Source: Entomortierella parvispora E1425 (taxonomy: Eukaryota; Fungi; Mortierellomycota). Taken from it: a DNA stretch of 64,000 nucleotides. Positions 2,363-58,435 of the stretch are shown here, piece by piece (the stretch's first letter is position 1; every line of letters begins with the position of its first letter). The notes beneath the pieces were generated by a model that was not told where the DNA came from, searched no databases, and worked only from the letters and a program-made list of their open reading frames with translations. The stretch is taken from the NCBI GenBank assembly GCA_020891255.1, contig BQFW01000005.1, forward strand, positions 1,612,001 through 1,676,000. Reading direction: 5' to 3'. A program made the position numbers and the translations under genes.

Positions 2363-2843
2363 TGTCACGGTCGGACGGCAGAAACAGGATAATGGATGTG
2401 GAAAGGAATAAACTTTAATGTATACTGTGAGTTGGAGACTGGGGGACTATGACGTCGCGTGTATGGGTTTTATACTGGCAGGCGGGCGATTCCCTCATCG
2501 GTTATGAATGGTCCAGAGGAGAACGAGATAGAAGATAGAAGGCAGAGGTCGTTCTGGTCAAGGTAACCGAGTAAGAAACCATTGCGCGAGGATTGGAGGA
2601 AGATGTGTACATGGGCAGGGCTACATCCGAGGGCAGAGGCGGCAGGGGCATTGAGGTGACGAGAGAGATCATAGATGCAGCCAAGATCAACTAGGCGTAG
2701 GCGAACAGGGATTGGTGTATGGGGATATTGGTCGGGGGTTTGAGGTGTTGGTCCAATGAGCCCTAGGCAGGGCACACTGGGAAAGGCGCGTTTTTTTTTT
2801 TTTTTTTTTTTTTTTTACCGGGGAACAGTCTAGGTTCGCGACA
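2363..2843 (-). mobile_element. Solo LTR, second copy made by tandem duplication
   Basis: Near-identical to 1449-1928 and inserted at the same monomer position. Flanks are GATAT/GGTAT (one mismatch). Confidence 0.9.
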
Positions 2844-3380
2844 GGTATCGGCATTTTCCTACATGTTGCATACCTGTCCATTGAACCAAGCATACTCCCA
2901 CGCACCGCGCCCGCTAAAAGCAATCGATTTTAATTCGACAAGCATGGTCGCACGCATAAACAAAAGCGCATTCAGTTGTGACCGAAAATGTCAAGTCGTC
3001 TCTCCGATGAGCATGTTGGAGGGATTTGAAGCCGGCTGAGACCCATGACTGAACTAGTTGCGGTGTGGCATCAACGTTTTCCTACCTTTTGCATATCCTG
3101 TCCATTGAACCAATTATACTCCCACGCACCGCGCCCAAGCATGATCGCAAAATATACACGCACAAACAAAGGCGCATGCAGTTGTGATCAAAAATGTCAA
3201 GTCGTCTCTCCGATGAGCATGTTGGAGGGATTTGAAGACGGCTGAGAGCCATGACTAAACTAGTTGCGGTGTGGTATCAGCATTTTCCTACCTTTTGCAT
3301 ATCCAGTCCATTGAACCAATTATACTCCATCCTCCGTCCGGATTTAAAAGAATCAATACCCGAATGTGTTCATTGGAACT

Positions 3381-3388
3381 TATATAAA
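3381..3388 (+). promoter_or_regulatory. TATA box candidate
   Basis: TATATAAA about 65 bp upstream of ATG 3453. Confidence 0.5.
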
Positions 3389-3452
3389 GGGCGCTCCATC
3401 AGACATAATCCACCAATTAAACTACCGTGCCAGTCTGTCGTTGTCCATCCAA

Positions 3453-3725
3453 ATGAGAATATCTGTCCTCTTACTCGCAGTGGTCTTGCATCTCCAGGCT
3501 GCCTGTCATGCCGCCTACCCTCTATGTGAAGCCTTGTCGTTTTGCTTATGCGAGTTCACCGAGCATCGGCTGAGAGTGTCTCTATACGAATGTGATTACC
3601 AGCTGGACAAAATGAACCTATCGTGGGTCGATGAATTCAACTCTTACGTTACCGACCTGAATGGATTTCGAAATTGTCTTATGTGGAGTCCACTCCCACC
3701 AGAGAACAGCTGGTGTTCTGGCTAG
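3453..3725 (+). CDS. Small secreted Cys-rich protein (90 aa)
   Basis: MRISVLLLAVVLHLQAACHA is signal-peptide-like. The mature part has 6 Cys (LCEALSFCLC...YEC...FRNC...SWC). Intronless, with an upstream TATA. Confidence 0.7.
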   Translation: MRISVLLLAVVLHLQAACHAAYPLCEALSFCLCEFTEHRLRVSLYECDYQLDKMNLSWVDEFNSYVTDLNGFRNCLMWSPLPPENSWCSG

Positions 3726-4220
3726 TTGACACTTTAAAAATAGCTCCTAGCCATAACTTTTCCGCCCACCAACAATTTTTCATTTTACGCACAGGCCTCA
3801 CGGCATTAACCCGCCCTGTCATAAAAATAAAAATAAAATATGCTCAGACGGGAACATGGATGTTTTGCGTTTCCTTCTGTCTCTGCGTTCTTTTCTTAAT
3901 TGCGCACAGGAAGCGTGTGCGTTTGCTGGCTCAGGATTTTCAAGGATTTTGCAGTGGGAGTGCCGGGGGTGGAGTGGAGACAAGAGCTGAAGGGCCCGCT
4001 TGCTCAGTTGCTTTGCTTTATTGATTCTGGAATCTCGTTCAGTGCAACATCCGCCCATTTGTTGTTGCTGAGCATGCCAATCGTCCGCTAATTATGTTGA
4101 TTTTGCTCCATTTCGGAACAGCCCTTCTTGCAAGTATCTGATTGCACGTTGTGCTGGAACCTGTTCCTGTAGATGTGCAACCTGCTCTTGTCAAAATTGC
4201 TCCAGCCTTAAGAGGTTATC

Positions 4221-4411
4221 CTACTACTGCAACTACATTGCATCAGTAGGGTAAAACTAACCTGTCTCGCGACGGTCTAACCCAACTCACGTTCCCTGAG
4301 GATGAGCCATCTATCGCTTAGTGAATTCTGCTTCAATATGATAGAAAAAGCCGACATCGAAGGATCAAAAAGCAGCGTCGCTATGAACGCCTGGCTGCCG
4401 CAAGCCAGTTA
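4221..4411 (-). rRNA. Degenerate 28S (LSU) rRNA fragment, domain V region
   Basis: Reverse complement of conserved LSU sequence: catcagtagggtaaaactaacctgtctc-cgacggtcta...gccgacatcgaaggatcaaaaagc-gcgtcgctatgaacgc-tggctgcc-caagccagtta, with many substitutions. Confidence 0.9.
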
Positions 4412-4594
4412 ACCATCTGTGTTAGTCTTTTGTGCAACCTGTGGTTTTGCTCCTTAATTTTATTAACCTGCCCTTTTTTTAGACAGCCGTTCCTTTCTGC
4501 CCTGAATTTCATATTTTCTTCTAGCGTCCACTGCTTTTTGCCTTTCCCTTTTGTTCATCATCCTTCCCCTCTGTTTTTTTCCTGAGTCCACTGT

Positions 4595-4646
4595 TGTCTC
4601 CAGTAATGTCTCCAGTAATGTCTCCAGGATTGTCTCCAGTGTTGTC
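4595..4646. repeat. 12-bp minisatellite (tgtctccagtaa), about 4.3 copies
   Basis: Directly visible tandem units at 4595, 4607, 4619 and 4631. Confidence 0.85.
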
Positions 4647-4765
4647 CCTTGGTACTGTACTGTCTCTTCCTCTCCCCCTGCTTTCGATTCTCCACTCGTG
4701 CTGGTGTTGTCGTTGCAATGCGCAGGTGGGGATGCATTTTTTTTTGTAACAGTGACCTCGCTCCC

Positions 4766-4773
4766 TATATAAA
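4766..4773 (+). promoter_or_regulatory. TATA box candidate for the hydrophobin
   Basis: cTATATAAAgagg about 190 bp upstream of ATG 4963, the same motif as at 3381. Confidence 0.45.
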
Positions 4774-4962
4774 GAGGTTGTGCCAACCGAATTCTACTCG
4801 TACCAAGACACACCTAATCCTCTCCTCAAGACTTAATATTCACACAATACTCTCGGCCCCTCAAAGCAACTCCACGGAATTTCATATCCATTGTGACAAC
4901 ATAAAATCCCGAATCAAGAAGGATCCTCCTTTAGAGTCAGCCTCAAGATTAACTACCTAAAA

Positions 4963-5244
4963 ATGGCCTTCAAGATGATGATCATTTCCTTTGTCCTGTC
5001 AACCTTTCTGATTAACACCGTTGCCAGTCAAATGTGTCCACCGGGACTTTTGAACAGCAATCCTCAATGCTGCGCTACTGATGCGTCAGGACTTGCGGAC
5101 CTTGACTGCAACGAACCATCTAGAAGTCCCTCAGATGCTAAAGATTTTGCTAGCATATGTCACGAGGCAAATAGAGTAGCAATGTGCTGTGGGATCCCAT
5201 TAGCAGGACAGGCAGTAGTGTGTTCACCCGCTATCGGCGTGTAG
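4963..5244 (+). CDS. Class II hydrophobin (cerato-ulmin/HFB family), 93 aa, intronless
   Basis: Signal peptide plus 8 Cys spaced C-X10-CC-X11-C-X16-C-X8-CC-X10-C, the class II pattern. Motifs CPPGL..SNPQCCAT, GL.DLDC and AGQA..C match Trichoderma HFBI-type proteins as I recall them. Confidence 0.95.
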   Translation: MAFKMMIISFVLSTFLINTVASQMCPPGLLNSNPQCCATDASGLADLDCNEPSRSPSDAKDFASICHEANRVAMCCGIPLAGQAVVCSPAIGV

Positions 5245-5567
5245 CAGCTCCCACCCTCTGATAGAACACGGTTGACCATAGTGACATTATATCAGTAAAA
5301 TCAACTCTTCCTGCTTACCCCTGACCCTGTACCTGACCCTGGCCCTTGTTTGTAATTCAGAACTCATCTAGGCAATACCCGTGAGTATTGACACCATGTG
5401 TGCTGCTTGCATTTCTCAACGTTAAACATCATCACTTACTTCCTCTTTGACCCACACATGACAGGGTCATGAACGGGAGAGGCAGAGAAGGCAGAGTGGT
5501 AAAAGGGACTAGAGAGAAGACAGCTGTAAGGAGGTTTATATTATAATGACGACTAAAACTATGAAGT

Positions 5568-6241
5568 TCACGGAGCAGTCTGAACAGAAGCCACTGGGAT
5601 GCCACGGTACACGTTGAGATATGTGGTAGTTGAGTCTGGAGCTATGATGCCAACCGTAAAGCTATGAAAGGCCAATGTTGTCAGATGCAAGCAGTTTAAA
5701 ATCCTCTCTTCTCCCACTTTCCAGTCGCTCACAATTTACCTATCCGGCACGGTAGCGGAAGGAGAGGAGACGCTAACTGGTCTCAAGCGTGAGTCTTGCT
5801 CTAACGACAGGGCCTTGAAAGTTGCTTCCATCTTGGACATGGTCCATGGCTCTGAGACTTTGCACGGCATGATCAAGTAGATGTTCCCCTAGTGTGTGAT
5901 TGACTGTGAGTTAACGCGCCAGTCTAGAAGGTCCGCGCGTTTTTTTTTTTTTTTACATTGTCGGGATGTCTGCCGCGGATAAGACATCTGCCTAGAGATA
6001 AAGCTGGCAGAACTTCTAGATCTTCAAAATCTTTAGCTTCCGAAAGATCGAGATACACCTGAAAGAGCTGCTCGGCGTGCTCAGGGAACTGACGACATTG
6101 CTCGGCTACACATTGAAACTGGTGTAAATCATGACAATTGACAGAGAACAATAAAAAAGTCAATGGGATGTTCCTCATTCCTATATTCGTAGCAAGAACA
6201 GTGGGATGGAAACAAAGATGCACCTTGGGATGCTGCTCCAT
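5568..6241 (-). CDS. SEN15: tRNA-splicing endonuclease subunit Sen15 (4 exons)
   Basis: Spliced reading MEQHPK|FQCVAEQCRQFPEHAEQLFQVYLDLSEAKDFEDLEV...GRHPDN|GNIYLIMPCKVSEPWTMSKMEATF...PDS|FTVGIIAPDSTTTYLNVYRGIP* with GT-AG introns. The VYLDL and terminal DST motifs are typical of Sen15. Confidence 0.75.
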
Positions 6242-6440
6242 GAGCAAAGAAGAGTGGGTTTTTTGCATGCAAGCATTGCATGGCATGTTCTTTTTTTTTG
6301 CCACCGAAAATCCAAAAAACCCAGTGGTCACATGACCTTTTTTTGGTGGCTGAAAATGTTCAACGTGGGCCTTCCTCGACCGTGAGTCGCGACTTCATCT
6401 CTGCCCTCTCCACCGTTCAACGACGATACATCGACCTACC

Positions 6441-7085
6441 ATGACTCGCGCTACCGAGGCCGCTACATTCTTTGGCATCACTGCCACCTTATACCTCGCC
6501 CTGCTCTTCCAGTGGCTGCCCATCACTCTGCCCAAGACCGTCCAAGAATTCACTTTGCCTGTCGTAAGGAACATCTATTTTTTTTTTTTTTTTTTTTTTT
6601 TGGCTACTGGACGCAAGAACCATGGAGCTCTGGACAAACTCTGGGACATCATTGCGAGGACATTGCTGAGAACAACACCACCACCACTTTTACAAAGGAT
6701 ACCCATTTGGATGGAATGAAAGATGGACGGATGGATGGACGTTGATGTCCGCTCAGAAGATTCGCATGGGGAGTTAATAATCTAACACCATACAACATGT
6801 ACATACAACACAACTCTCTAGCTTCCTTGGTGGGCCTTGGTGACTTTTGGCGCTTACAGTCTTGGCAACATTGGCTACCATGTGTTGACCTTCCGCGATT
6901 GCCCTGAGGCCTACGATGAGCTCCAAGTGGTAAAACACTGTTGTGCAGAACCAACATGTATGAAATGTTTTGTTATTTGGACAGAGTGTAACTGACCGTC
7001 TATCCCTTTTCATCCCTTCATTCTCTTTTAGCAAATCTCGCAAGCACAGAACGATTTGAGGAGTAAGGGAGTGTCGATCAAGTAA
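6441..7085 (+). CDS. DPM3: Dolichol-phosphate mannosyltransferase subunit 3 (3 exons)
   Basis: MTRATEAATFFGITATLYLALLFQWLPITLPKTVQEFTLPV|LPWWALVTFGAYSLGNIGYHVLTFRDCPEAYDELQV|QISQAQNDLRSKGVSIK*. Canonical introns and the DPM3 motif LP...L..FG.YSL...G..V.TF.DC..A..EL..QI..A..DL..KG. Confidence 0.92.
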
Positions 7086-7398
7086 AGCGGGATCATCAAC
7101 AAGTAATGGCAGAAGTCCTCACTAGAATCAAAAGGACGGATATTGACCGGGCAATAGTCCCAATTGAATAAAAAAGCATATTATACCATACTATGGACAT
7201 TTTAACAGAATACCGCAGAGTGGCAGCCATAGTTGTTTTGCGCTGTATTTTCTGCAGCAACAGAGCCTCAGTGATCCAACTTTTCAGGTAGTATGTAGAA
7301 ATTTATAGAGGGACGCTTGAATAGGGGTTGAGTTGGTATGGGGTTTCATTTTTGCAGAGAATGTCATGCGCTTTTGGATCAAACTTCCCTTCCATCGT

Positions 7399-8019
7399 TT
7401 AGGCTGCCTTCTTCTCGACCTTTTTCTTGCTCTTGATCATGATCATGGACAAGAATGTAAGGATGACGGTCAAACCAAAGACCAAAAGGACGCAAGGGAT
7501 CCGGATGGCGTATTCGCGTGGGGGAAAGTAGGCGTGCAAGAAATATGTCTCGTCCACGAAGGGCTATAATCCAGCGAATAACATGACATGGAAGAAAGGG
7601 AACAGAGAGGTCTTTAGGATCATATATCTACATAGCACGAACATGCGAATCGTGTTTGATCCATTCGGACTTGCAACAGGTATTCCTTACCATGACGATA
7701 GCCCAAAGGGTATAGTATACAAAAACGATCGTGCTGAACGTCAGGAGGGACGCACCCACAACTTTATCCTGTCCGCTGGCCTAATAACGTTACGGAGATG
7801 TCAATGACGCGGTCAGCATCAACAGGTTCATGAGTTCCTCGCTAAGGATGGTTTGTCCTGTTTGGCTGCGATCGTCTTCCTGAATGCAGTGTTAATCATC
7901 TGCACCCGATGACTCGGGTGAATGTCCTCTGTCCACAGAATAACAGATGCCCTTGTCTCCTGTTCAGTGTTGTATCCAAGCATCGGTCCCTCGAGTCCAG
8001 CATCTCGACTCCATACCAT
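7399..8019 (-). CDS. DPM2: Dolichol-phosphate-mannose biosynthesis regulatory subunit (3 exons; exon 1 is the ATG only)
   Basis: ATG|gtatgg, then ASGQDKVVGASLLTFSTIVFVYYTLWAIVM|PFVDETYFLHAYFPPREYAIRIPCVLLVFGLTVILTFLSMIMIKSKKK*. Matches the DPM2 signature YYT.W....PFVD....LH.YF.PREYAI.IP. Confidence 0.92.
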
Positions 8020-8360
8020 TGTGATTGAGTTTTTGAAAGTGATGAACAAAGGTGAAGCGCCACGATGTCACTTTTGAGAGGAGCCTGCACAATTTCACGT
8101 GACCCTTTCTTAGTCACATGATGCATAACTTTTTTTTTTTTTTTTTTTTTTTTTTTCGCGTATCCTCCATTATTATGGTGGCATCTTTCTGGGCTGTAGG
8201 TCATTATTTATATGTTTTCGAAAGAGTTGGTACTGTTTCTTAGAGTTGGCGTCTCTTGTTCAATGGTTGTTAAGGCTAGGAGTTTACAGAAATGCTTGTT
8301 GAGGTCAGGGGTTTACAGAAAGGTGGGAAGCACGCAATGCAAAAAAAAAAAAAAAAAAGA

Positions 8361-8542
8361 AATCATGCTGAAAGAACGCATTCAGTCCAATTCGGGTTTA
8401 TTATTCTTATTTTCGGCTCTTTCGGCTGTCTCAGAGCCAAACAGAATGCAGATAAATAATTTTCGAGTCCGATTTCGCACATGACACCAATACTGTGCTC
8501 ACGCAAAAAATCATGCTGAAAGAGAACGCATTCTGTCCAATT
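8361..8542. repeat. Short direct duplication (~32 bp) in intergenic DNA
   Basis: aatcatgctgaaagaacgcattcagtccaatt at 8361-8392 and aatcatgctgaaagagaacgcattctgtccaatt at 8509-8542. Confidence 0.7.
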
Positions 8543-13959: not shown

Positions 13960-16900
13960 CTAACAGCCGCCCGCCAATGGCTTTTGCCCCATGGCGGCAA
14001 CCACAGACATCCGGAAGCGGTCCCGAAGTGTGTCCATGTCAGCCCGCGTAATGAACCCATAGTCCGTGAAAGCAACCTTGAGCAGCCGATCAAACAACTG
14101 TCGTGGCCCTGCTCCTGCTCCCTGTCCTGGAACATTTCTTGACGCGTCCACAGGAGCCGGGCTCTTCTTCACCTCTTCCGTCGACGATCGCTCCTCTGAC
14201 GTAGAGAGGTCCTCCTGGACCACAGACACAGGTGCAGTCTTGTCCTTGAACTGATCCAAGAACGAATGAAGACTTAGAACCACCCCTTCCTCATTCTGAC
14301 ATTCCAACAGCGCCTTCTCGCATCCCTTCAAAATCGCCAACCCTAGGCTCAGCAGGAACGCGGCTCCTTTCAAAAAGACCCCGTCCAAAACACGGACCGC
14401 CGCTTTGGGAGGCAAAGCTGACTGGTATAGGCACAAGAACCATGGAGTCGTGATGGTCGCCAAGTCCAAATCCAAGTCCAGAAAGTGTTGGGCCAGAGCA
14501 GGAAGCGAGATCCCAACAAGGTGCAAAAAGACACGCTGGTCAATCTGTACGCCCACCAGCGTCCGCGAGTAATAATCGGGCAAAATCTCCTCGCATACTG
14601 CGGCCAGCAGCCAAAAGGTATCCTCTTCCTTCAGATGCAGAAGCATCACTGCTGCCACAATGTTCATCGATTGTGCATAGCCAATCGCCGGGTTCCTCCA
14701 AGAATAACTGACCAGGACTCGCCTCAACGCCCCAAGACCGATAGGAGACTGGTAGGCGGGATGGTCGGGCATGCTTCGTTTGATATCCTTTTCGATTTCG
14801 CCCAGAATCGGCGAGCTCTTGCTGTTGTTGTGCAAAAGATTAAGAGCATAGGTTTCGTCGTTGGATCGGAGATAAAGCCCTCCAGAAAGAACCATCCAGA
14901 GCTGGGGTCGAAAAGAGTCTGGGATTCCCCTCATGACCAAAGACTGGAGCATGGTTGTTTTGATCATACACACGTCTCGACCGTACATGGCAAAGTAGTC
15001 GACCCAATCGCACTCCTGATCCATTTCATCTGGGGCCAGCTCTGTGCCTGCTCCATACTTGAGCGCCGCTTTTGTATGTTCGTCCACCTGTCTTGAAAAG
15101 ATGTGTTGAAGACTGAACGGCAGCGGTACCATGGACTCTTGCTCTCCAATTGCACTATCCTTGTCATCCATGTCAGACACAGGTGTTCCGCTGCCACTGT
15201 CTGTAGACTCGCCCCTGGTACTTCCAGCGCTACTGCGCTGTGAATCCACTGTAGAACCGCGATGGATGACACTCTGACTGGTCTGGATCTCTAGACTCTT
15301 CAAAAGAGTCGTTGAAGCGTCTGAAGTACGCCACCGTTTGTCAACCATCTCAAAAAGGTCCTGACTGAGTCCCTGCTGCGTCGTGAACCAAAACTTGAAC
15401 CGCGATTTGACAGAAATGGCCACAGATCCATGAGGTCGCGCTGTCATGAACGACATTAATCCAGATATGGCTTGACTGGATGCGATAGATGCAGCGCCCA
15501 TGGTCGCAAGTCCACCAAATGTCCCCGAACTAGGTCGCGAGGTGTTGGCAGCCGAGGGACTCGATTCTTGCTTAATCTCGAGAATATCCGAAAAGGGGAT
15601 CACTAGGGTCAAGGTTGGATTCCATGGTCTGTTTTCGTCACTTCCTTTCAAACTGTCAGTGCCAGACATGTAGCACAAGTAATGCTGCGAGACAAAAAGG
15701 GTGCCCTCTCTAGCGTCTGCAATTGACTTTGTCTCCATCATGGTCACAATGTCGTCTTCCGGTCGTTCAGTCATCGGCAGACGGAAGGTGCTCCTGAACA
15801 TCCGGTTTCGTCGGTATTTCTCAAGATCTACCATGGACTGGATCGTGAACGGATCTAATCCCGAGTTTCGCGAGGCTTGTTGCATATCCGGATCTTCCTC
15901 CTGTTCACTATCGATCTGTTTTGTCATCTGACCGTCGGAGATCTTGAAGACGAGCTCCTTCATATGGGCGTTGCAAAAGTGAGAGAGCATGTCCATTACT
16001 TCGCGCTGATGGAATAATGGAAGAAGTACCAGCTATTCATTCATAATAAAAGGACGTCAGCCAAGGCTCCAAAAGTAAAGATGCCACTCTAAACAAAGCA
16101 AAGACGTACCTTGGCCGTCAAGGTTTGAACCACGATATGTCCCTTGCTTCCGTTGTATTCCTCATCTAGCTCCGTGACATCCTTGAACGCCACACTGGTA
16201 TGAATAGCTTTGTCCGTCGCACTTCGATAGCCTGCTGTCACGGTGAAACTATCTTCTGTCATGGGCGAATTGTGCCAACACAAAAAGTTCTTTGTGAGAG
16301 CGACATAGCCCTGAAGAGTCGATCCATCTTCCTGGCTCACAAGTCCAGATCTGTAAACTATTGCACACAACCAACGTAAGAATGGTCAGTTTCCGAGCCT
16401 CTAAATGACCCCCAATCGCGCAGGTCAGCCGCACCCTTGACAACCTGTTCTTACAACAGAGCAACTCCTCGTCCTTGAACTTGAACAACCGGGAAAGCTC
16501 TGCTGCCATGATGACTTTGTCTTGGTCTGGATCCATGGACACTAAAAAAAAAAAAAAATAGGGGGGAGAGAGTGAGTGAACAGTGCTCACACGGAAATAC
16601 TTCACGTGGACATCTAACGTTCCCCTACATGCTTCGCTGAGTCGGTCAATCTCATAGATCCAGACTCTATCCGACTCGAGCTCCGAGTTGCGTCCCAAAG
16701 CGCCATCCAACTCCAGTTCCGTGACCTATCATGCGCGCAAGATAACAAGATGCCAGCGGCGGTTAATATAGATGTTTGGTTGTTCTCCTGTTCTCATCTT
16801 TTTCTTTTCGTTCTGACCTTTGGGAAGACAGTCTTGTGAATGCAAGCCCAATCCGCCCGGATCGTGGTTTCGTCCACTGCCATGGCAACCACATATTTCT

Positions 16901-45412: not shown

Positions 45413-47956
45413 CTAATTTATCCAATCGGCACCAATGGAAGAGGCAATGAACGCGAACTTGTCGGTCGTTTCCTCGATCCTTTTAGCAATCGGCTTTCCA
45501 GACCCATGTCCAGCGTTGGTTTCGATACGTATTACAAGAGGGTTTTTGGTGAGGGGACCGGCCGTGTACTGAAGTTCTGCAATGTACTTGAACGAGTGCA
45601 GAGGAACAACACGGTCATCGTGGTCCGAAGTGAACAAAGCAAAAGCAGGGTATGGCATGCTCTTGTGTACATTGTGCAGTGGCGAGTACTTGTGGTTGTT
45701 GTGGAAATCCTCGGCGTTGTCATCAGGATAACCATAATCGGATTGCCAAGCATGCCCAATTGTGAATTTGTGGAATCGCAACATATCCAAGACACCGACT
45801 GAGGCGACCGCTGCACCGAAAAGCTCAGGAGCCTGGTTCACGCATGCAGCCACAAGAAGACCGCCGTTTGATCCTCCAGTGATAGCCAACTTTGCAGGCT
45901 GTGTATACTTCTCATGGATGAGATATTTAGCTGCGTACTGGAAGTCATCGAAAACATTCTGCTTGTTCAACTTGGTCCCTGCCTTGTGCCAATCCTGACC
46001 ATACTCTCCACCTCCACGAAGGTTGGCAACAGCCACAACACCTCCAAAGTGTTGCATGAAGATAATGTAGCTGGGTGAGTACGCAGCCTTCCGAGAAATA
46101 CCAAAACCGCCGTAACCACTTAGTAGGGTTGGGTTGTTGCCATCAAAGACAAGATCCTTTCGATGAGTCACGAACATGGGGATCTTGGTGCCGTCCTTGC
46201 TCTCGTAGAATACCTGCTTTGTTTCGAACAGAGTATTATCAAAGTTCTTGACGATAGCCTTGCGGAAGATCGATAATCGCTTCTCCTGATCCTCAATACC
46301 GAAGTCGTAACGGTAAATGGAACTTGGAGTGAGATACGACGAAAAAGAAATAAAAAATTCTTTGGTCTCCCGAAGCCCAACAATGTCTCCAAGAGTACCG
46401 ACAGGAAGAGGAATCTGGTAGAGAAACTGCCCTGAGCTCAAATCATGGACGACGGCGATGTCCTTGACATCGCGCATGTAAGAGAGTACCAACTTGTTGC
46501 TGTCAACGACAACAGCATCGACCAAAACGTCTTCAGTCTGAGGGACGAGATCGATAAAGCCCTTAAAGTTATTAAAAGGAGGTGCAAAACGTAGTCAGCT
46601 TCTGATCAAACAAAACCAGGTTAAATGTACTTTTACCAGGCTCGATGGTTATTACTTTCTCAGGATGTGCTAAGTCATACTTGACGATCTTATTGCGAGG
46701 GGCATCGCTGTTGGTCCAAAAATAAAAAAGAGTATCGTCGTTGGCCAAGCTATGATTTGAAGAATAGGCATGAAGTCAGAGCTAGAGCAAAAATCACAAG
46801 ATAGACTGTATTAGAATTCCATAATCGAAATGCAGAATGGTAACCTACTAGTCATATAGCGCCTCAAAGTCGTCGACAACCTTGTTCCATTCGTATTCCT
46901 GCGTGATGATGGCATTTCCAGCTGCCTCAAGATCGCCAAAATACAGCTTCCTGGCGGGGTAACTGTCCTTCCTGATGCTCAAGAGAATATATCTTCCGTC
47001 GTCAGTGATTTTGGCAGCGGGTTTGTACAGGGGGTTCTCAGGATCGAAAAAAACAAGAATATCTTCCGACTGGAGAGTGCCGATTCTGTGGTAGAACAGT
47101 CTCTGGTGAATGTTGGAGGCGGTCTCGGTTCCTAGTTTGACAGCGTCGACATCGGGTTTTTCGAAGCTCTTTTGAGGCGCAGACAAAAGTGGACGAACAG
47201 GATCAAAATGAAAATGACGAAAATTTAGCCACAGCAAGAAAAAAAATTGTCACACGGTCACTAGGATCGCTTGAGATCGCATTTAAACTCACAGAGTAGT
47301 AAAACCCCTTGTCGTCATGGGTAAAGACTATTTGGGTGAACTTCACCCACTCGATGATATCATTTAACTTGTTGCCATTACAGTCTTGGACGTAAATAGT
47401 GCACCAGTCAGATCCTGACTTGGAGATGGTGTACGCGTACAATTCTCCAGAGTGCGAGAATTTATGAGTTCTCATTGAGGCCGTTCCATCCGCCTCCAAA
47501 GTGTTGGGATCCAAGAATACACGAGGCTCGGACTCGAGAGTGTCCTGTTGGTACAAGACTCTCTGAGACTGGAGCCCAGAGTTATGGAAGTAGTAGTAGT
47601 GACTGCCACGCTTGAATGGAGTACCGAAACGCTCATAGTTGAACAATTCTGTCAAACTGAGAGAAATAAAAAAAGGGATGGGACTATTAATATCGGTCTA
47701 CCGTTTCCCTCCAGCAACTAATACTCTCATACCGCTCGTTGAAGCTTTGCTTGTCTTCAAACTTGTCCATAAACTGTGAGGCGATCTTGTTTTGGGCACT
47801 GATAAAAGCCTTAGTTTCTTCAGAGTGAGGATCTTCGAGCCAGCTGTAAGGGTCGGCAACAGTAACGCCGTGCTGAGTATAGGTGACCGCGGTTCGGCGG
47901 ACGTAGGGATAGACGATACCGCCGTCCAGAGAGCTAATGGGCGACGTGTTGACCAT
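45413..47956 (-). CDS. Prolyl oligopeptidase (S9A), copy 1, frames intact, multi-exon
   Basis: VADPYSWLED N-terminus, propeller exons and the catalytic triad GGSNGG / DHDDRV / AGHG. Confidence 0.93.
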
Positions 47957-51055: not shown

Positions 51056-51929
51056 ATATCTCCAGGCTAATCAAAATGGACGCGACTAGACTGGAAGCTA
51101 GGGTCAGTCGCCTGTCGTCATCTTTACAGGCCATTCACGAGCCGCTTTGTTTCAGGGTACGTTTGTGGTGCAAATATCCATTCACATGATTTCCGATGTA
51201 ATTTGAGTGTTTTTGTTCTAATCATCCTATGCAAACATAGATGCCAACGATTCATTTGATATCGCAGTATGAGCTGGCCGCCAAACGCCATTCCAAGCAG
51301 TGGAAGCAAGACCGTCACAGAAACTAAACTACTGCTTTGTTGGAGCCAAGAATCTCAAGACCGAACCTTCTTCAATCTTCCCCGTAATGCAATACCTCTG
51401 TAATTTGCCATCCCCTTCCTGGATGGCACATCGCTCCAAATCAAATATGGAAATAAAGCACAGCTGCAGCCGGAAAACATCGAGACTCTGTAATTCTCAA
51501 ATCTGAATTGCAAATGGTGTGGAGTGCTCCAAAAGAGTTGTGTCAACTGTTAAGAACCATGTTAGTTGCTTCAGGCGGGATAAATCCCAGGTGGATCCAA
51601 GTAGGTAGCTGCAAACGAATAGATCTCGTGCAACAGTCAGATCAGACTGACGGTGCGGCGTCTTCACTCACAGCAAAGCCACAAACAAATGGTCAACTAC
51701 AACCAGTGCCACCATTGCACCATTGCCACCACCACAAACAACACTTCACAACCATTAGTATAAATACCCCAGACTTCATATCAATAAACATCATTCAATC
51801 TTCGTACTCTTCCCTTGGCCTTTACTATCGCAATAGCACTAGATAGATATCCCAAAGAGAAAAAAAGAGCAGTAGAAGTGAACAAAGCACTACAACGCAC
51901 TATGACGAATTTGATGCAGGGAGGAGAGA

Positions 51930-51962
51930 AAGAGCCGAGATCGAAGGATCAAAAAGCAACGT
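51930..51962 (-). rRNA. 33-bp 28S rRNA snippet
   Basis: aagagccgagatcgaaggatcaaaaagcaacgt has one mismatch to the conserved LSU antisense sequence as I recall it. It is the same region as within 4221-4411. Confidence 0.7.
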
Positions 51963-55926: not shown

Positions 55927-58435
55927 ATGGTCAGCACCGAAACCTCCTCCGTCACCTCTCTAGACGGCAAGATTGTCTATCCTCAAGTCCATCCGATGTC
56001 ACCTACACTCAGCATGGCGTGACTGTTGCTGATCCTTACCGTTGGTTGGAAAATCTCAACTCGGAGGAGACAAAGGCTTTTGTCGAGGCTCAGAACAAGA
56101 CTGCCGCCAAGTTTATGAACAAGTTTGAGGACAAGCAAAAGTTCAAGGATCGGTAAGGATGGTGTGGGTGTGCTTCCTGACCATCATCCCATTCAACAAA
56201 AATAACGAGACCTATTGCTAATCTGTCTCTGCATCAGCTTAACTGAGCTCTTCAACTTTGAGCGATTTGGCGTTCCTCGCAAGCGCGGTGACTATTACTA
56301 CTATTTCCGCAACTCTGGTTTACAGTCTCAGCATGTACTTTACCAGCTGGATACCCCCAAGTCCGAGCCGCGTGTTTTCTTGGACCCTGGAGCGCTGGAG
56401 GCTGATGGAACGGCTTCCCTGAAAACCCACAGCTTCTCGCACTCAGGAAAGTTAATGGCCTATGTCATCTCCAGATCTGGGTCTGACTGGTGCACGATTT
56501 ACCTCATGGACTGTCATGGCAACAAGTTGGACGATGTTATTGAGTGGGTAAAGTTTACCCAGACTGCCTTTACCCATGATGATAAAGGTTTCTATTACGT
56601 TGTAAGTTTCACTTCTTTGTTTTCTCTTCTTTTTTTTTTCTTTTCCTCGCGCTATCGGCGATACCCATTAATCCCTTTGATTGTACTTTTTAAAGACCTA
56701 TGAAGGGCTTAATGTCGATGCTGTCAAGGCAGGAACTGAGACTGGCGCTGATCTCAACCAACGATTGCTCTACCATAAGATCGGCACGCCTCAGTCAGAG
56801 GATGTCCTTGTCCATCTCGACCGCGATAACCCTTCGTACAGATTCATTCCTAAGATCTCTGATGACGGAAAATACATCCTCATGACCATCAAAAAGGACA
56901 CTGCTCCCGCCTCCATGTTATATATCGGTGATCTCGAAACCGCCAACAATATCATTACATTGGGCCACAACTGGAACAAAATTGTCGATTGTTTCAAGTT
57001 CAGATATTATTAGTAATGTATAAGGATTCTTGAAACGGACATAATGTGTCTAGATCCTCTCCTGACTTAACTTGCCCTTACTTGACTGAAAATGCTGCAC
57101 CATAGCTTGACCAGCGATGGCACTGTCTTCTACTTCGATACAAATAAGGACGCTCCCCGCAGTAAGATTGTCAAGTACGATTTGTCCAAGCCAGAGGAGG
57201 TAAAAACTTTTAATAATTCTTTGATGTATCCAACTTGAACATTTGTCTATCTCCATGACACTCACAATAATTTCAATAATTCCGGCAATTACAGGGGTTC
57301 ATCGATCTTGTACCTCAGTCTGAGGACGTTTTGGTCAATTCTTCTGTCGTGGACGGCAACAAGTTGGTGCTAACCTATATGCGCGATGTGAAGGACATCA
57401 TTGTTGTTGACCTCTGGGCAGCTCCTCCATCAGATCCCTCTTCCCGTCGGCACACTTGGCGATATTGTCGGAGACCGTGAGAGCCGGGAATTCTTTATCT
57501 TTTTCACGTCCTTCCTCACTCCTGGTACGCTATATAGTTATGACTTTGGCGTTGAGGACCAGGAGAAGCGTCTATCGATTTTCCGAGAGATAAGCGTCAA
57601 GAACTTTGATAGCACTTTGTTTGAGACTAAGCAAGTTTTCTATGAGAGCAAGGATGGTACCAAGATCCCTATTTTTGTTACTCATAGGAAAGACCTTGTC
57701 TTCGATGGCAACAATCCAACTTTTTTGTTTGGATATGGTGGTTTCTCGTCCTCGCTCAAGGCTGGTTTCACGTTTGCGCACATTGTCTTCATGCAGCACT
57801 TTGGAGGTGTTGTCGCCGTTGCCAACCTTCGTGGTGGCGGAGAGTACGGTCAGAACTGGCATAGCGCTGGGACCTTGTTGAACAAGCAAAACGTTTTCGA
57901 CGACTTCCAGTATGCCGCCAAATATCTCATCAACGAAAAGTACACCCAGGCCTCCAGGTTGGCCATCAATGGACAATCGAACGGTGGTCTTCTTGTTGCT
58001 GCTTGTGTTAACCAGGCACCCGAACTCTTCGGCGCCGCCGTTGCCGAAGTGTCAGGCTTGGATATGTTGCGGTTTCACAAGTTTACTATTGGTCACAGTT
58101 GGCAATCCGAATATGGCTATCCAGATGACACGGTCGAGGACTTTCACAACCTTCTCAAGTACAGTCCCCTCCACAATGTTCACAAGAACAAGCCGTATCC
58201 CGCCTTTGCCTTGTTCACTGCTGACCACGATGACCGTGTTGTTCCCCTGCACTCGTACAAGCACATTGCCGAGCTGCAGCACACTGCTGGGCCTTTGACC
58301 AGAAATCCCCTTGTTCTGCGAACCGCAACCAAGACTGGACATGGAGAAGGAAAACCTCTTGCTAAGCGTATAGAGGAGACCACAGACAAGTTCGCGTTTA
58401 TTGCAGCCGCCATTGGTGCGACTTGGAGAGACTAG
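55927..58435 (+). pseudogene. Prolyl oligopeptidase copy 2 with two frameshifts
   Basis: Colinear with copy 1, same intron positions, triad GQSNGG/DHDDRV/TGHG retained. A net 4-nt deletion at about 55993 and a net 8-nt deletion at about 57408 break the frame. Confidence 0.85.

What the first reader, a model, noticed from the sequence alone, without database searches (positions are those of the whole stretch)
4963..5244. Canonical class II hydrophobin in an apparently non-Dikarya (Mortierellaceae-like) genome: candidate horizontal transfer
Seen: exact class II Cys spacing, HFBI-like motifs, an intact frame with signal peptide and a TATA, 323 bp from the SEN15 stop. Established: class II hydrophobins are described from filamentous Ascomycota, and hydrophobins are generally reported as absent from early-diverging fungi. 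The ascomycete genes I know carry introns and this one has none. Inference: horizontal acquisition, possibly through an mRNA intermediate, giving the host a surface-active protein. The host taxon is itself my inference.
Basis: partly seen in the sequence, partly recalled or inferred. Interest (0 to 1): 0.85.

Follow-up and report, generated by a model that had tools for sequence, protein, structure and literature searches.

The report
Unannotated class II hydrophobin in Entomortierella
This is a real, intact gene for a small secreted water-repellent coat protein (class II hydrophobin) in the soil fungus Entomortierella parvispora; the protein type is otherwise typical of ascomycetes and probably reached the Mortierella family by old gene transfer, but such a gene was already reported in a Mortierella relative in 2018.

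Summary
Window 4963-5244 (+) is an intact 93-codon ORF. It scores 78 bits on Pfam Hydrophobin_2 (cut-off 24), has the exact class II cysteine spacing and a signal peptide, and its model matches HFBI, NC2 and HFBII.

The host guess was right. The window is Entomortierella parvispora E1425, contig BQFW01000005.1 (Mortierellomycota). The gene lies between host genes, 323 bp from SEN15, and no gene is called there in the public record.

- **Not the first case.** One class II hydrophobin was reported in Mortierella elongata in 2018. Intronless relatives with a homologous 5'UTR and signal peptide occur in Linnemannia elongata and in contigs labelled Podila and E. lignicola.
- **Ascomycete origin is supported for the family.** That second group is 78-82% identical to a Dactylellina (Orbiliomycetes) protein and nests inside ascomycete sequences.
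- **Closest relatives of this gene.** Its mature domain is closest to Hypocreales proteins (61%).
- **Introns.** Ascomycete relatives carry a conserved phase-1 intron that every Mortierellaceae copy lacks.
- **The transfer is old.** The ORF's composition matches the host, and synonymous sites against the ascomycete relative are saturated.

One versus two transfers stays unresolved. Read support and expression could not be checked.

The scan noted two more hydrophobin-like genes on other pieces of this genome.

The parts
4963..5244 (+). Class II hydrophobin gene, single exon, 93 codons plus stop; no gene is called here in the public record
   Evidence: PF06766, 78.4 bits; fold matches HFBI, NC2, HFBII; no gene with this product is on record; no gene is called at this place in BQFW01000005.1.
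4963..5028 (+). Signal peptide (residues 1-22, predicted cut after VAS). It is of the type shared by Mortierellaceae hydrophobins (M-x-F-K-M-I...FL-x-x-TV).
   Evidence: 11 of 24 positions identical to the metagenome member P0214, against 4-6 for ascomycete relatives. The cut site is inferred by inspection.
5035..5223 (+). Eight-cysteine hydrophobin core (C25 to C87). Disulfides expected by homology to HFBII: C25-C75, C36-C66, C37-C49, C76-C87.
   Evidence: The disulfide pairing is inferred from the solved class II structures and was not tested.
4880..4962 (+). Proximal 5' untranslated region with a block (ATCAAGAAGGATCCTCC ... CAAGATT) homologous to the same region of other Mortierellaceae hydrophobin genes
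   Evidence: blastn, window 4913-5022 vs L014, 71% over 111 bp, E 2e-6; alignment of six loci.
4766..4773 (+). TATATAAA, candidate TATA box 197 bp upstream of the ATG
   Evidence: Its function is inferred.
4594..4646 (+). 12-nt tandem repeat (TTGTCTCCAGTA, 4.4 copies) in the upstream region
   Evidence: Significance unknown.
4251..4430 (-). Decayed 28S rRNA fragment (Rfam LSU model about 2825-3005), antisense, 0.55 kb upstream of the gene. A fragment of the same 28S segment lies upstream of the hydrophobin in L. elongata and in the 'Podila' contig.
   Evidence: Whether it belongs to the gene unit is unresolved.
5568..6331 (-). SEN15 (tRNA-splicing endonuclease subunit), the host neighbour, tail to tail, with its stop 323 bp from the hydrophobin stop
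   Evidence: two exons, each with a weak Sen15 hit to complementary parts of the profile. (called 140-aa gene with PF09631 in the public record).

Best explanation
Window 4963-5244 encodes a functional secreted class II hydrophobin of Entomortierella parvispora. After signal-peptide removal, the roughly 71-residue protein is locked by four disulfides. It exposes a flat aliphatic patch, gathers at air-water and wall-air interfaces, lowers surface tension, and makes aerial hyphae, sporangiophores or spores water-repellent. That function is inferred from family membership; nothing here tests it.

The gene is resident host DNA. It belongs to a small Mortierellaceae family of intronless class II hydrophobin genes that share a homologous 5'UTR and signal peptide. 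The family descends from ascomycete genes by old inter-phylum transfer, in one event or more. This copy is a divergent member whose mature domain stays close to the common, Hypocreales-like class II type. The public annotation missed it.
For: Identity as a class II hydrophobin:
- Pfam Hydrophobin_2, 78.4 bits against a 24-bit cut-off.
- Exact class II cysteine spacing.
- HFBI matched at E 2.7e-18.
- AlphaFold model with mean pLDDT 74. Foldseek hits above the noise are only HFBI, NC2, HFBII and the chimeric hydrophobin NChi2, at probability 1.00 and target-normalised TM 0.53-0.79.

Resident in the host:
- The TBC gene in the window is 100% identical to the NCBI E. parvispora protein.
- The window maps to BQFW01000005.1, with SEN15, DPM3 and DPM2 called next to the gene.
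- The assembly is Nanopore at 409x from a bacterium-cured culture, in 19 contigs (PMC8759367).
- ORF GC is 48% and GC3 is 45%, within the host range.

Family in Mortierellaceae:
- L. elongata AG-77 'hydrophobin 5', contigs labelled Podila and E. lignicola, and a soil-metagenome contig.
- All are continuous ORFs without introns.
- The signal peptide and a 5'UTR block are homologous to the window gene.

Ascomycete origin:
- 267 hits among 1.84 billion representatives. Of 30 looked up, 26 are Ascomycota, 1 is Mortierellaceae and 3 are unnamed.
- The second Mortierellaceae group is 78-82% identical to Dactylellina cionopaga P0216. With Penicillium solitum it forms a clade supported at 98/95 inside ascomycete sequences.
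- The Dactylellina, Aphanocladium and Pochonia genes all have a phase-1 intron two residues after Cys4. Nine further ascomycete-type metagenome loci (L004-L012) are split at the same profile position. Every Mortierellaceae copy lacks the intron.

Age:
- Synonymous sites between Dactylellina and the Mortierellaceae group are saturated.
Against: - No read-level check of the junctions was possible.
- No RNA run was listed, so transcription is unshown. An RNA-guided AUGUSTUS annotation did not call the gene.
- Two of the 12 positions that form the HFBII hydrophobic patch are not aliphatic here: S42 and G77. The patch list is from memory of the HFBII structure paper.
- The tree rests on 68 columns. 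The placement with Hypocreales is 85/93, not starred, and a long-branch Aspergillus sequence attaches to the query when it is included.
- A single clade of all Mortierellaceae copies plus Dactylellina is not rejected (AU p 0.13), so the number and direction of transfers are open.
- Two of the Mortierellaceae records are contigs of 1.7 and 2.2 kb whose taxon labels are doubtful.
Confidence: 0.75

Rival explanations
1. Separate, later acquisition. The mature domain of this particular gene came from a Hypocreales-like ascomycete, independently of the Dactylellina-like group in other Mortierellaceae. It was joined by recombination or gene conversion to the 5' module (5'UTR and signal peptide, perhaps the promoter) of a resident hydrophobin gene.
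For: - The mature domain is 61% identical to Aphanocladium album and 57% to Verticillium, but about 40% to the other Mortierellaceae group.
- It lacks the two one-residue loop deletions shared by that group, Dactylellina and Penicillium.
- It groups with Aphanocladium and Pochonia at 85/93.
- All five Mortierellaceae rows as one clade with Dactylellina outside gives AU p 0.0496.
- The signal peptide versus mature domain contrast gives Fisher p 0.049.
Against: - Both tests are borderline.
- One clade that includes Dactylellina is not rejected (p 0.13).
- The query is close to the family consensus, which inflates its identity to the many Hypocreales sequences in the databases.
- Both lineages would have had to lose the same intron, or both arrive as cDNA.
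- No recombination breakpoint was mapped.
Confidence: 0.4
2. Vertical inheritance. Class II hydrophobins date back to the common ancestor of Mortierellomycota and Dikarya and were lost in nearly all other lineages.
For: - Several Mortierellaceae carry the family.
- The gene has host-like composition and a host-type 5' module.
- A 2022 survey argues that hydrophobins are not confined to Dikarya.
Against: - The Mortierellaceae group nests inside ascomycete sequences at 98/95 and is 78-82% identical to one orbiliomycete protein. Its next-best matches are 58-61%.
- The query sits with Hypocreales rather than outside all ascomycetes.
- This reading needs losses in Basidiomycota, Mucorales and most other phyla. 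In the 2022 survey four of five Mucoromycota proteomes, three of them Mucorales, yielded no canonical hydrophobin.
Confidence: 0.08
3. Assembly artefact. An ascomycete contaminant read was stitched into the contig.
For: Junction reads could not be examined. The gene is absent from the public annotation.
Against: - The contig is 1.91 Mb, from a 409x Nanopore assembly of a bacterium-cured culture.
- Host genes lie within 0.4 kb on one side.
- The 5'UTR and signal peptide are of the Mortierellaceae type, not the ascomycete type.
- The gene has no intron, unlike its ascomycete relatives.
- Composition is host-like.
- Logan contigs of a DNA run hold 100% of the sampled words of 4000-6500, though that run may be the source data.
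Confidence: 0.02

Closest known systems
HFBI and HFBII of Trichoderma reesei (PDB 2FZ6, 1R2M) and NC2 of Neurospora crassa (4AOG)
   Same: Same Pfam family and the same eight-cysteine spacing. Sequence identity in the Foldseek alignments is 46-49% to HFBI, 41% to NC2 and 35-38% to HFBII. The predicted fold is the same (target-normalised TM 0.70-0.79). The second hydrophobic loop, CC-G-I-P-L-A-G-Q-A-V-V-C, is conserved.
   Different: The host is Mortierellomycota rather than Ascomycota. The gene is intronless. The first hydrophobic loop reads D-A-S-G-L-A-D-L where HFBI has Q-V-L-G-L-I-G-L, so the patch is somewhat less aliphatic. No biochemical data exist.
Linnemannia (Mortierella) elongata AG-77 'hydrophobin 5', the putative group 2 hydrophobin reported by Ahrendt et al. 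2018 (PMC6784888)
   Same: A Mortierellaceae host, an intronless single exon, the same type of signal peptide, a homologous 5'UTR block, and a 28S fragment upstream.
   Different: Identity is only about 40% in the mature domain. Two loops are one residue shorter in the L. elongata type. That type is 82% identical to a Dactylellina protein, whereas the window gene is nearest to Hypocreales proteins. No flanking gene synteny was seen.
Aphanocladium album PWT90_06258 and Pochonia chlamydosporia hydrophobin (Hypocreales)
   Same: These are the nearest mature domains, at 61% (Aphanocladium) and 52-54% (Pochonia). Aphanocladium also shares the motifs GLLNSNPQCC, PSRxPS and AMCCGxPxAGQAxVC. In the tree all three group together at 85/93.
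   Different: Their genes carry a phase-1 intron of 80-81 nt two residues after Cys4. Their signal peptides are unrelated.
Multi-domain class II hydrophobins of Hypocreales (for example Akanthomyces lecanii 'Trihydrophobin'; also Beauveria, Epichloe and Claviceps)
   Same: These are the highest-scoring database hits, and their individual domains are 49-55% identical to the query.
   Different: They are chains of two to four domains, 264-718 aa long. The window gene has a single domain.

Membership tests
Class II hydrophobin (Pfam PF06766, cerato-ulmin family) | Eight cysteines spaced C-X9-10-CC-X11-C-X16-C-X6-9-CC-X10-C | tested here: met
   The pattern is C25-X10-CC-X11-C-X16-C-X8-CC-X10-C87.
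Class II hydrophobin (Pfam PF06766, cerato-ulmin family) | Profile match above the curated threshold | tested here: met
   78.4 bits against a gathering score of 24, E 4e-22, profile positions 1-63 of 65.
Class II hydrophobin (Pfam PF06766, cerato-ulmin family) | Small secreted protein with an N-terminal signal peptide | tested here: met
   93 aa. The N-terminus MAFK plus a 13-residue hydrophobic core plus VAS|Q was judged by inspection; no signal-peptide predictor was available.
Class II hydrophobin (Pfam PF06766, cerato-ulmin family) | Four-stranded beta core with one helix, as in HFBI and HFBII | tested here: met
   The model has strands at 33-39, 45-50, 72-76 and 87-89 and a helix at 59-68, with mean pLDDT 74. 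Foldseek gives HFBI, NC2 and HFBII at probability 1.00 and target-normalised TM 0.70-0.79.
Class II hydrophobin (Pfam PF06766, cerato-ulmin family) | Exposed aliphatic patch built from the two beta-hairpin loops | tested here: inconclusive
   By alignment to HFBI and to the HFBII patch list recalled from memory, 10 of 12 positions are aliphatic or Ala. S42 and G77 are not. Surface exposure was not computed.
Class II hydrophobin (Pfam PF06766, cerato-ulmin family) | Surface activity, with interfacial films that dissolve in aqueous ethanol or SDS | not testable with these tools
   Needs purified protein.
Class II hydrophobin (Pfam PF06766, cerato-ulmin family) | Typical ascomycete gene structure: a phase-1 intron two residues after Cys4 (typical, not defining) | tested here: not met
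   The intron is present in the Dactylellina, Aphanocladium and Pochonia genes, and nine ascomycete-type metagenome loci (L004-L012) are split at the same profile position. It is absent here and in all other Mortierellaceae copies.
Horizontally acquired gene (Ascomycota to Mortierellaceae) | Recipient sequences nest inside donor-phylum diversity | tested here: met
   The second Mortierellaceae group plus Dactylellina plus Penicillium is supported at 98/95 inside ascomycete rows. The query with two Hypocreales rows is supported at 85/93 only. The alignment has 68 columns, so deep nodes are unresolved.
Horizontally acquired gene (Ascomycota to Mortierellaceae) | Patchy distribution: absent from the recipient's wider relatives | tested here: inconclusive
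   Of 30 hits looked up, 26 are Ascomycota, 1 is Mortierellaceae and 3 are unnamed. In a 2022 survey four of five Mucoromycota proteomes, three of them Mucorales, yielded no canonical hydrophobin.
Horizontally acquired gene (Ascomycota to Mortierellaceae) | Physically embedded in recipient chromosome | tested here: met
   The gene lies on the 1.91 Mb contig BQFW01000005.1, and SEN15, DPM3, DPM2 and TBC are called alongside. Read-level support was not obtained.
Horizontally acquired gene (Ascomycota to Mortierellaceae) | Foreign composition, expected only if the transfer were recent | tested here: not met
   GC is 48%, GC3 is 45% and the CAI-like index is 0.76, against 0.80-0.85 for host ORFs. 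The gene is not an outlier, which is consistent with an old event.

The most novel reading that the evidence does not exclude
Mortierellaceae took up ascomycete class II hydrophobin domains at least twice: a Dactylellina-like type and a Hypocreales-like type. Each time the incoming mature domain ended up behind the same host 5' module (5'UTR and signal peptide, perhaps the promoter, possibly with an upstream 28S-derived fragment). On this reading a resident gene serves as a landing pad that makes foreign coding sequence expressible and secretable. The very low synonymous divergence of the Dactylellina-like type between contigs labelled as different genera would then hint that this roughly 1-2 kb unit still moves among Mortierellaceae.
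Probability: 0.3. Interest if true: 0.7.

Novelty: new member of a known kind. Interest (0 to 1): 0.45.

Why it matters
[quoted passage not shown] The single 2018 sentence on Mortierella elongata has not been followed up in the literature I could search.

This gene shows that the family in Mortierellaceae is larger than annotation suggests, because the copy is not called in the public record. It also shows at least two sequence types, and the ascomycete origin can be argued from intron structure as well as from trees.

If the proteins are surface-active, they would explain how aerial sporangiophores and water-repellent mycelium are built in a phylum thought to lack hydrophobins. Mortierellaceae are abundant soil fungi, so this may also bear on soil water repellency.

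The finding extends a known exception. It does not overturn a rule.

Tried and rejected
- **Word-index protein search with the ORF alone:** no candidate.
- **Exact look-up of the product:** not on record.
- **Read laying over 2500-8400:** No junction or depth evidence was obtained.
- **RNA run search for 4800-5400:** none listed.
- **First trees:** the query paired with Aspergillus tubingensis P0128, with a zero-length query branch and a 1.8-1.9 long partner. I treated this as long-branch attachment and rebuilt without that row.
- **Synteny between the window and the L. elongata scaffold:** nothing beyond the 28S fragment and the 5' end of the gene.
- **The upstream 28S fragment as proof of locus homology:** weakened. 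The alignment shows two subfamilies of such fragments. The L. elongata upstream copy is closer to window 51877-51962 than to the copy next to the window gene.
- **Repeats or terminal repeats around the gene that would mark a mobile element:** none found in the window.
- **Further hydrophobin copies or relics in the window:** none.
- **Metagenome scan:** nine of the ten loci were ordinary intron-bearing ascomycete genes. Only L003 is of the Mortierellaceae type, and it is truncated.
- **Protein Atlas searches:** these only restated the family.

Full report
**1. The observation**

Window 4963-5244 (+) is an intact 93-codon ORF from ATG to TAG. Its product has eight cysteines spaced C-X10-CC-X11-C-X16-C-X8-CC-X10-C. 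Pfam Hydrophobin_2 (PF06766) scores 78.4 bits, E 4e-22, against a curated cut-off of 24, over nearly the whole profile.

Among solved structures, the protein matches Trichoderma HFBI at E 2.7e-18, and then NC2 and HFBII. An AlphaFold2 model built on a 58-sequence alignment has mean pLDDT 74. It shows four strands and one helix. In the PDB it finds only class II hydrophobins above the noise, at probability 1.00; for HFBI, NC2 and HFBII the target-normalised TM is 0.70-0.79.

The first 22 residues read as a signal peptide. This is by inspection, because no predictor was available. TATATAAA lies at 4766-4773. The distance from the hydrophobin stop to the SEN15 stop is exactly 323 bp, with SEN15 on the opposite strand.

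**2. The host**

The 678-codon TBC/GRAM ORF at 13960-15996 (-) is 100% identical to an NCBI protein of Entomortierella parvispora. The next best hits are Gryganskiella, Dissophora, Mortierella and other Mortierellaceae.

Fetching that protein's contig shows that the window is part of BQFW01000005.1 (1.91 Mb, assembly GCA_020891255.1). SEN15 (140 aa, Pfam Sen15), DPM3, DPM2 and a thioredoxin-peroxiredoxin gene are called next to the hydrophobin position. No gene is called at the hydrophobin itself. An exact look-up of the product also finds nothing on record.

The species belongs to Mortierellomycota. The genome paper describes a 409x Nanopore plus Illumina assembly in 19 contigs, made from an endobacterium-cured culture and annotated with AUGUSTUS using RNA-seq (PMC8759367). 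The ORF's GC (48%), GC3 (45%) and codon index are within the range of host ORFs.

A contaminant chimera is therefore very unlikely.

**3. Relatives**

A full HMMER pass over 1.84 billion representative proteins gave 267 hits at E 0.001 or better. I looked up the source of 30 of them. Twenty-six are Ascomycota, one is Podila minutissima (Mortierellaceae) and three are unnamed.

The top scores belong to multi-domain hydrophobins of Hypocreales (Akanthomyces, Beauveria, Epichloe, Cordyceps, Claviceps). Their individual domains are 49-55% identical to the query.

A profile search seeded with the query and the Podila protein brought out a Mortierellaceae group:
- Linnemannia elongata AG-77 'hydrophobin 5'
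- a Podila minutissima protein
- an Entomortierella lignicola protein
- a soil-metagenome protein

The same search also returned Dactylellina cionopaga 'Cryparin' and an Aphanocladium album protein.

**4. Prior knowledge**

Ahrendt et al. [quoted passage not shown] With the Caulochytrium proteins, they call these the first hydrophobins outside Dikarya. A 2022 preprint repeats this.

[quoted passage not shown] I found no paper in the searchable library that analyses the origin of the Mortierellaceae genes.

So the phenomenon is known at the level of one sentence. It is not characterised.

**5. Evidence for an ascomycete origin**

The mature domains of the Mortierellaceae group are 81-87% identical to each other and 78-82% identical to Dactylellina P0216 (Orbiliomycetes). 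Their next-best matches are 58-61%.

In a 65-row maximum-likelihood tree, the group, Dactylellina and Penicillium solitum form a clade supported at 98/95 inside ascomycete rows. Dactylellina as sister to the Mortierellaceae group, rather than inside it, is not rejected (AU p 0.46).

Gene structure gives the direction of transfer:
- The Dactylellina gene has two introns, phase 1 after S-C-S-T and phase 0 after C-C-T-L-D-L.
- The Aphanocladium and Pochonia genes have the same phase-1 intron two residues after Cys4.
- Nine ascomycete-type loci from metagenomes (L004-L012) are split at the same profile position.
- All five Mortierellaceae genes are uninterrupted.

Ascomycete genes therefore carry the ancestral structure, and the Mortierellaceae genes are the derived, intron-free form. 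This fits transfer from an ascomycete, perhaps as processed RNA or followed by intron loss. Nothing distinguishes these two routes, and no poly(A) relic is visible downstream of the window gene.

Synonymous sites between Dactylellina and the Mortierellaceae group are saturated: third positions are about 40% identical. The event is old.

**6. Where the window gene sits in this family**

Its signal peptide, MAFKMMIISFVLSTFLINTV, matches the Mortierellaceae type, for example MPFKMITLSLVLAAFLVSTV. Eleven of 24 positions are identical, against 4-6 for ascomycete relatives.

The similarity continues into the 5'UTR. blastn gives 71% over 111 bp, half of it upstream of the ATG, with a shared ATCAAGAA[G/C]GAT[C/T]CTC block. 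A truncated metagenome copy (L003) has the same 5' module.

The mature domain behaves differently:
- It is only about 40% identical to the other group, but 61% to Aphanocladium album and 57% to Verticillium.
- It lacks the two one-residue loop deletions that the group shares with Dactylellina and Penicillium.
- It groups with Aphanocladium and Pochonia, both Hypocreales, at 85/93.

The tests are borderline:
- All Mortierellaceae rows as one clade without Dactylellina: AU p 0.0496.
- The same clade with Dactylellina: p 0.13.
- Signal peptide versus mature domain contrast: Fisher p 0.049.

I conclude that the gene belongs to the Mortierellaceae family through its 5' part. Whether its mature domain shares the same transfer or came from a second one is open. 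I lean slightly towards at least two events or a domain replacement.

**7. Caveats on the relatives**

The 'Podila' and 'E. lignicola' records are contigs of 2.2 and 1.7 kb. They are 80-91% identical to the L. elongata locus through coding and non-coding DNA, with dS 0.04-0.28. Yet the TBC orthologues of those genera are 45-48% identical as proteins, and only 74-81% within Linnemannia.

Vertical descent between genera does not explain this. Either the short contigs came from a Linnemannia-like source during multiplexed low-coverage sequencing, or a small unit has spread recently.

The firm Mortierellaceae cases are therefore E. parvispora (this window) and L. elongata AG-77 (a 21 kb scaffold), together with soil contigs.

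**8. The 28S fragment**

A decayed piece of 28S rRNA lies antisense 0.55 kb upstream of the window gene. Pieces of the same 28S segment lie about 1 kb upstream of the hydrophobin in L. elongata and in the 'Podila' contig.

Such fragments are also dispersed elsewhere in both genomes and fall into two subfamilies. I treat the linkage as suggestive only.

**9. Function and mechanism**

By homology, the signal peptide is removed. The mature protein of about 71 residues forms four disulfides: C25-C75, C36-C66, C37-C49 and C76-C87. It then presents an aliphatic patch from the two hairpin loops.

The second loop, G-I-P-L-A-G-Q-A-V-V, is well conserved. The first, D-A-S-G-L-A-D-L, is less aliphatic than in HFBI.

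The expected activity is adsorption at air-water and hydrophobic surfaces, lowering of surface tension, and coating of aerial structures. All of this is inferred. No expression data could be obtained, and the RNA-guided annotation did not call the gene.

**10. Verdict**

This is a real, correctly read gene in a correctly inferred host. It is a new, unannotated and divergent member of a known protein family, in a fungal family where one such gene was already reported.

Horizontal origin from Ascomycota is well supported for the Mortierellaceae hydrophobins as a whole and moderately supported for this gene. The event is old and is not specific to this genome.

The open questions are the shared 5' module behind two types of mature domain, and the oddly similar loci across genera. 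The scan had already noted two further hydrophobin-like genes elsewhere in this genome. I could not read them.

Noticed in passing
window 4251-4430 (-), 43445-43553 (+), 43677-43976 (+), 51877-51962; L001 1781-1954 and 12852-12939; L015 1-128: Decayed fragments of 28S rRNA are scattered through ordinary chromosomal DNA. The same 28S segment (Rfam LSU model about 2830-2990) recurs in both E. parvispora and L. elongata, in at least two sequence subfamilies, like a dispersed repeat. In three loci a copy lies antisense 0.55-1 kb upstream of a hydrophobin gene.
   Followed up: partly
L001 2554-3735, L014, L015, L002: Hydrophobin loci labelled Linnemannia, Podila and E. lignicola are 80-91% identical in DNA, non-coding flanks included, with dS 0.04-0.28. 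The TBC orthologues of those genera are only 45-48% identical as proteins. This suggests sample carry-over in low-coverage assemblies or a recently spreading unit.
   Followed up: partly
L003 2050-2295 (metagenome contig Ga0302182_10003112): A Mortierellaceae-type hydrophobin relic. ATT stands where the relatives have the start ATG. Only the first half of the domain is present, and it ends near the place where ascomycete genes carry their intron.
   Followed up: partly
P0050, P0051, P0054, P0057 (Orbilia, Epichloe, Lecanicillium, Claviceps): Multi-domain class II hydrophobins are named 'beta ketoadipyl CoA thiolase, th1' in NCBI records. This looks like a propagated misannotation.
   Followed up: no
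L013 4001-4417 (Dactylellina cionopaga LDUC01000171.1): This orbiliomycete 'Cryparin' is 78-82% identical in its mature domain to the Mortierellaceae hydrophobins, although synonymous sites are saturated. It is far closer to them than to any other ascomycete sequence in the set (58% at most).
   Followed up: yes
window 45413-46525 (-) and 57401-58435 (+): Two prolyl-oligopeptidase (S9) ORFs lie about 11 kb apart on opposite strands, and each carries the end of the N-terminal propeller domain. They are probably exons of two paralogous genes.
   Followed up: no
window 40082-43249 (+): An uninterrupted 1055-aa ankyrin-repeat ORF lies directly upstream of the 28S fragments at 43445-43976, in the most GC-rich part of the window (56%).
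   Followed up: no
window 4594-4646: A 12-nt tandem repeat (TTGTCTCCAGTA, 4.4 copies) lies in the hydrophobin upstream region, between the 28S fragment and the TATA box.
   Followed up: no
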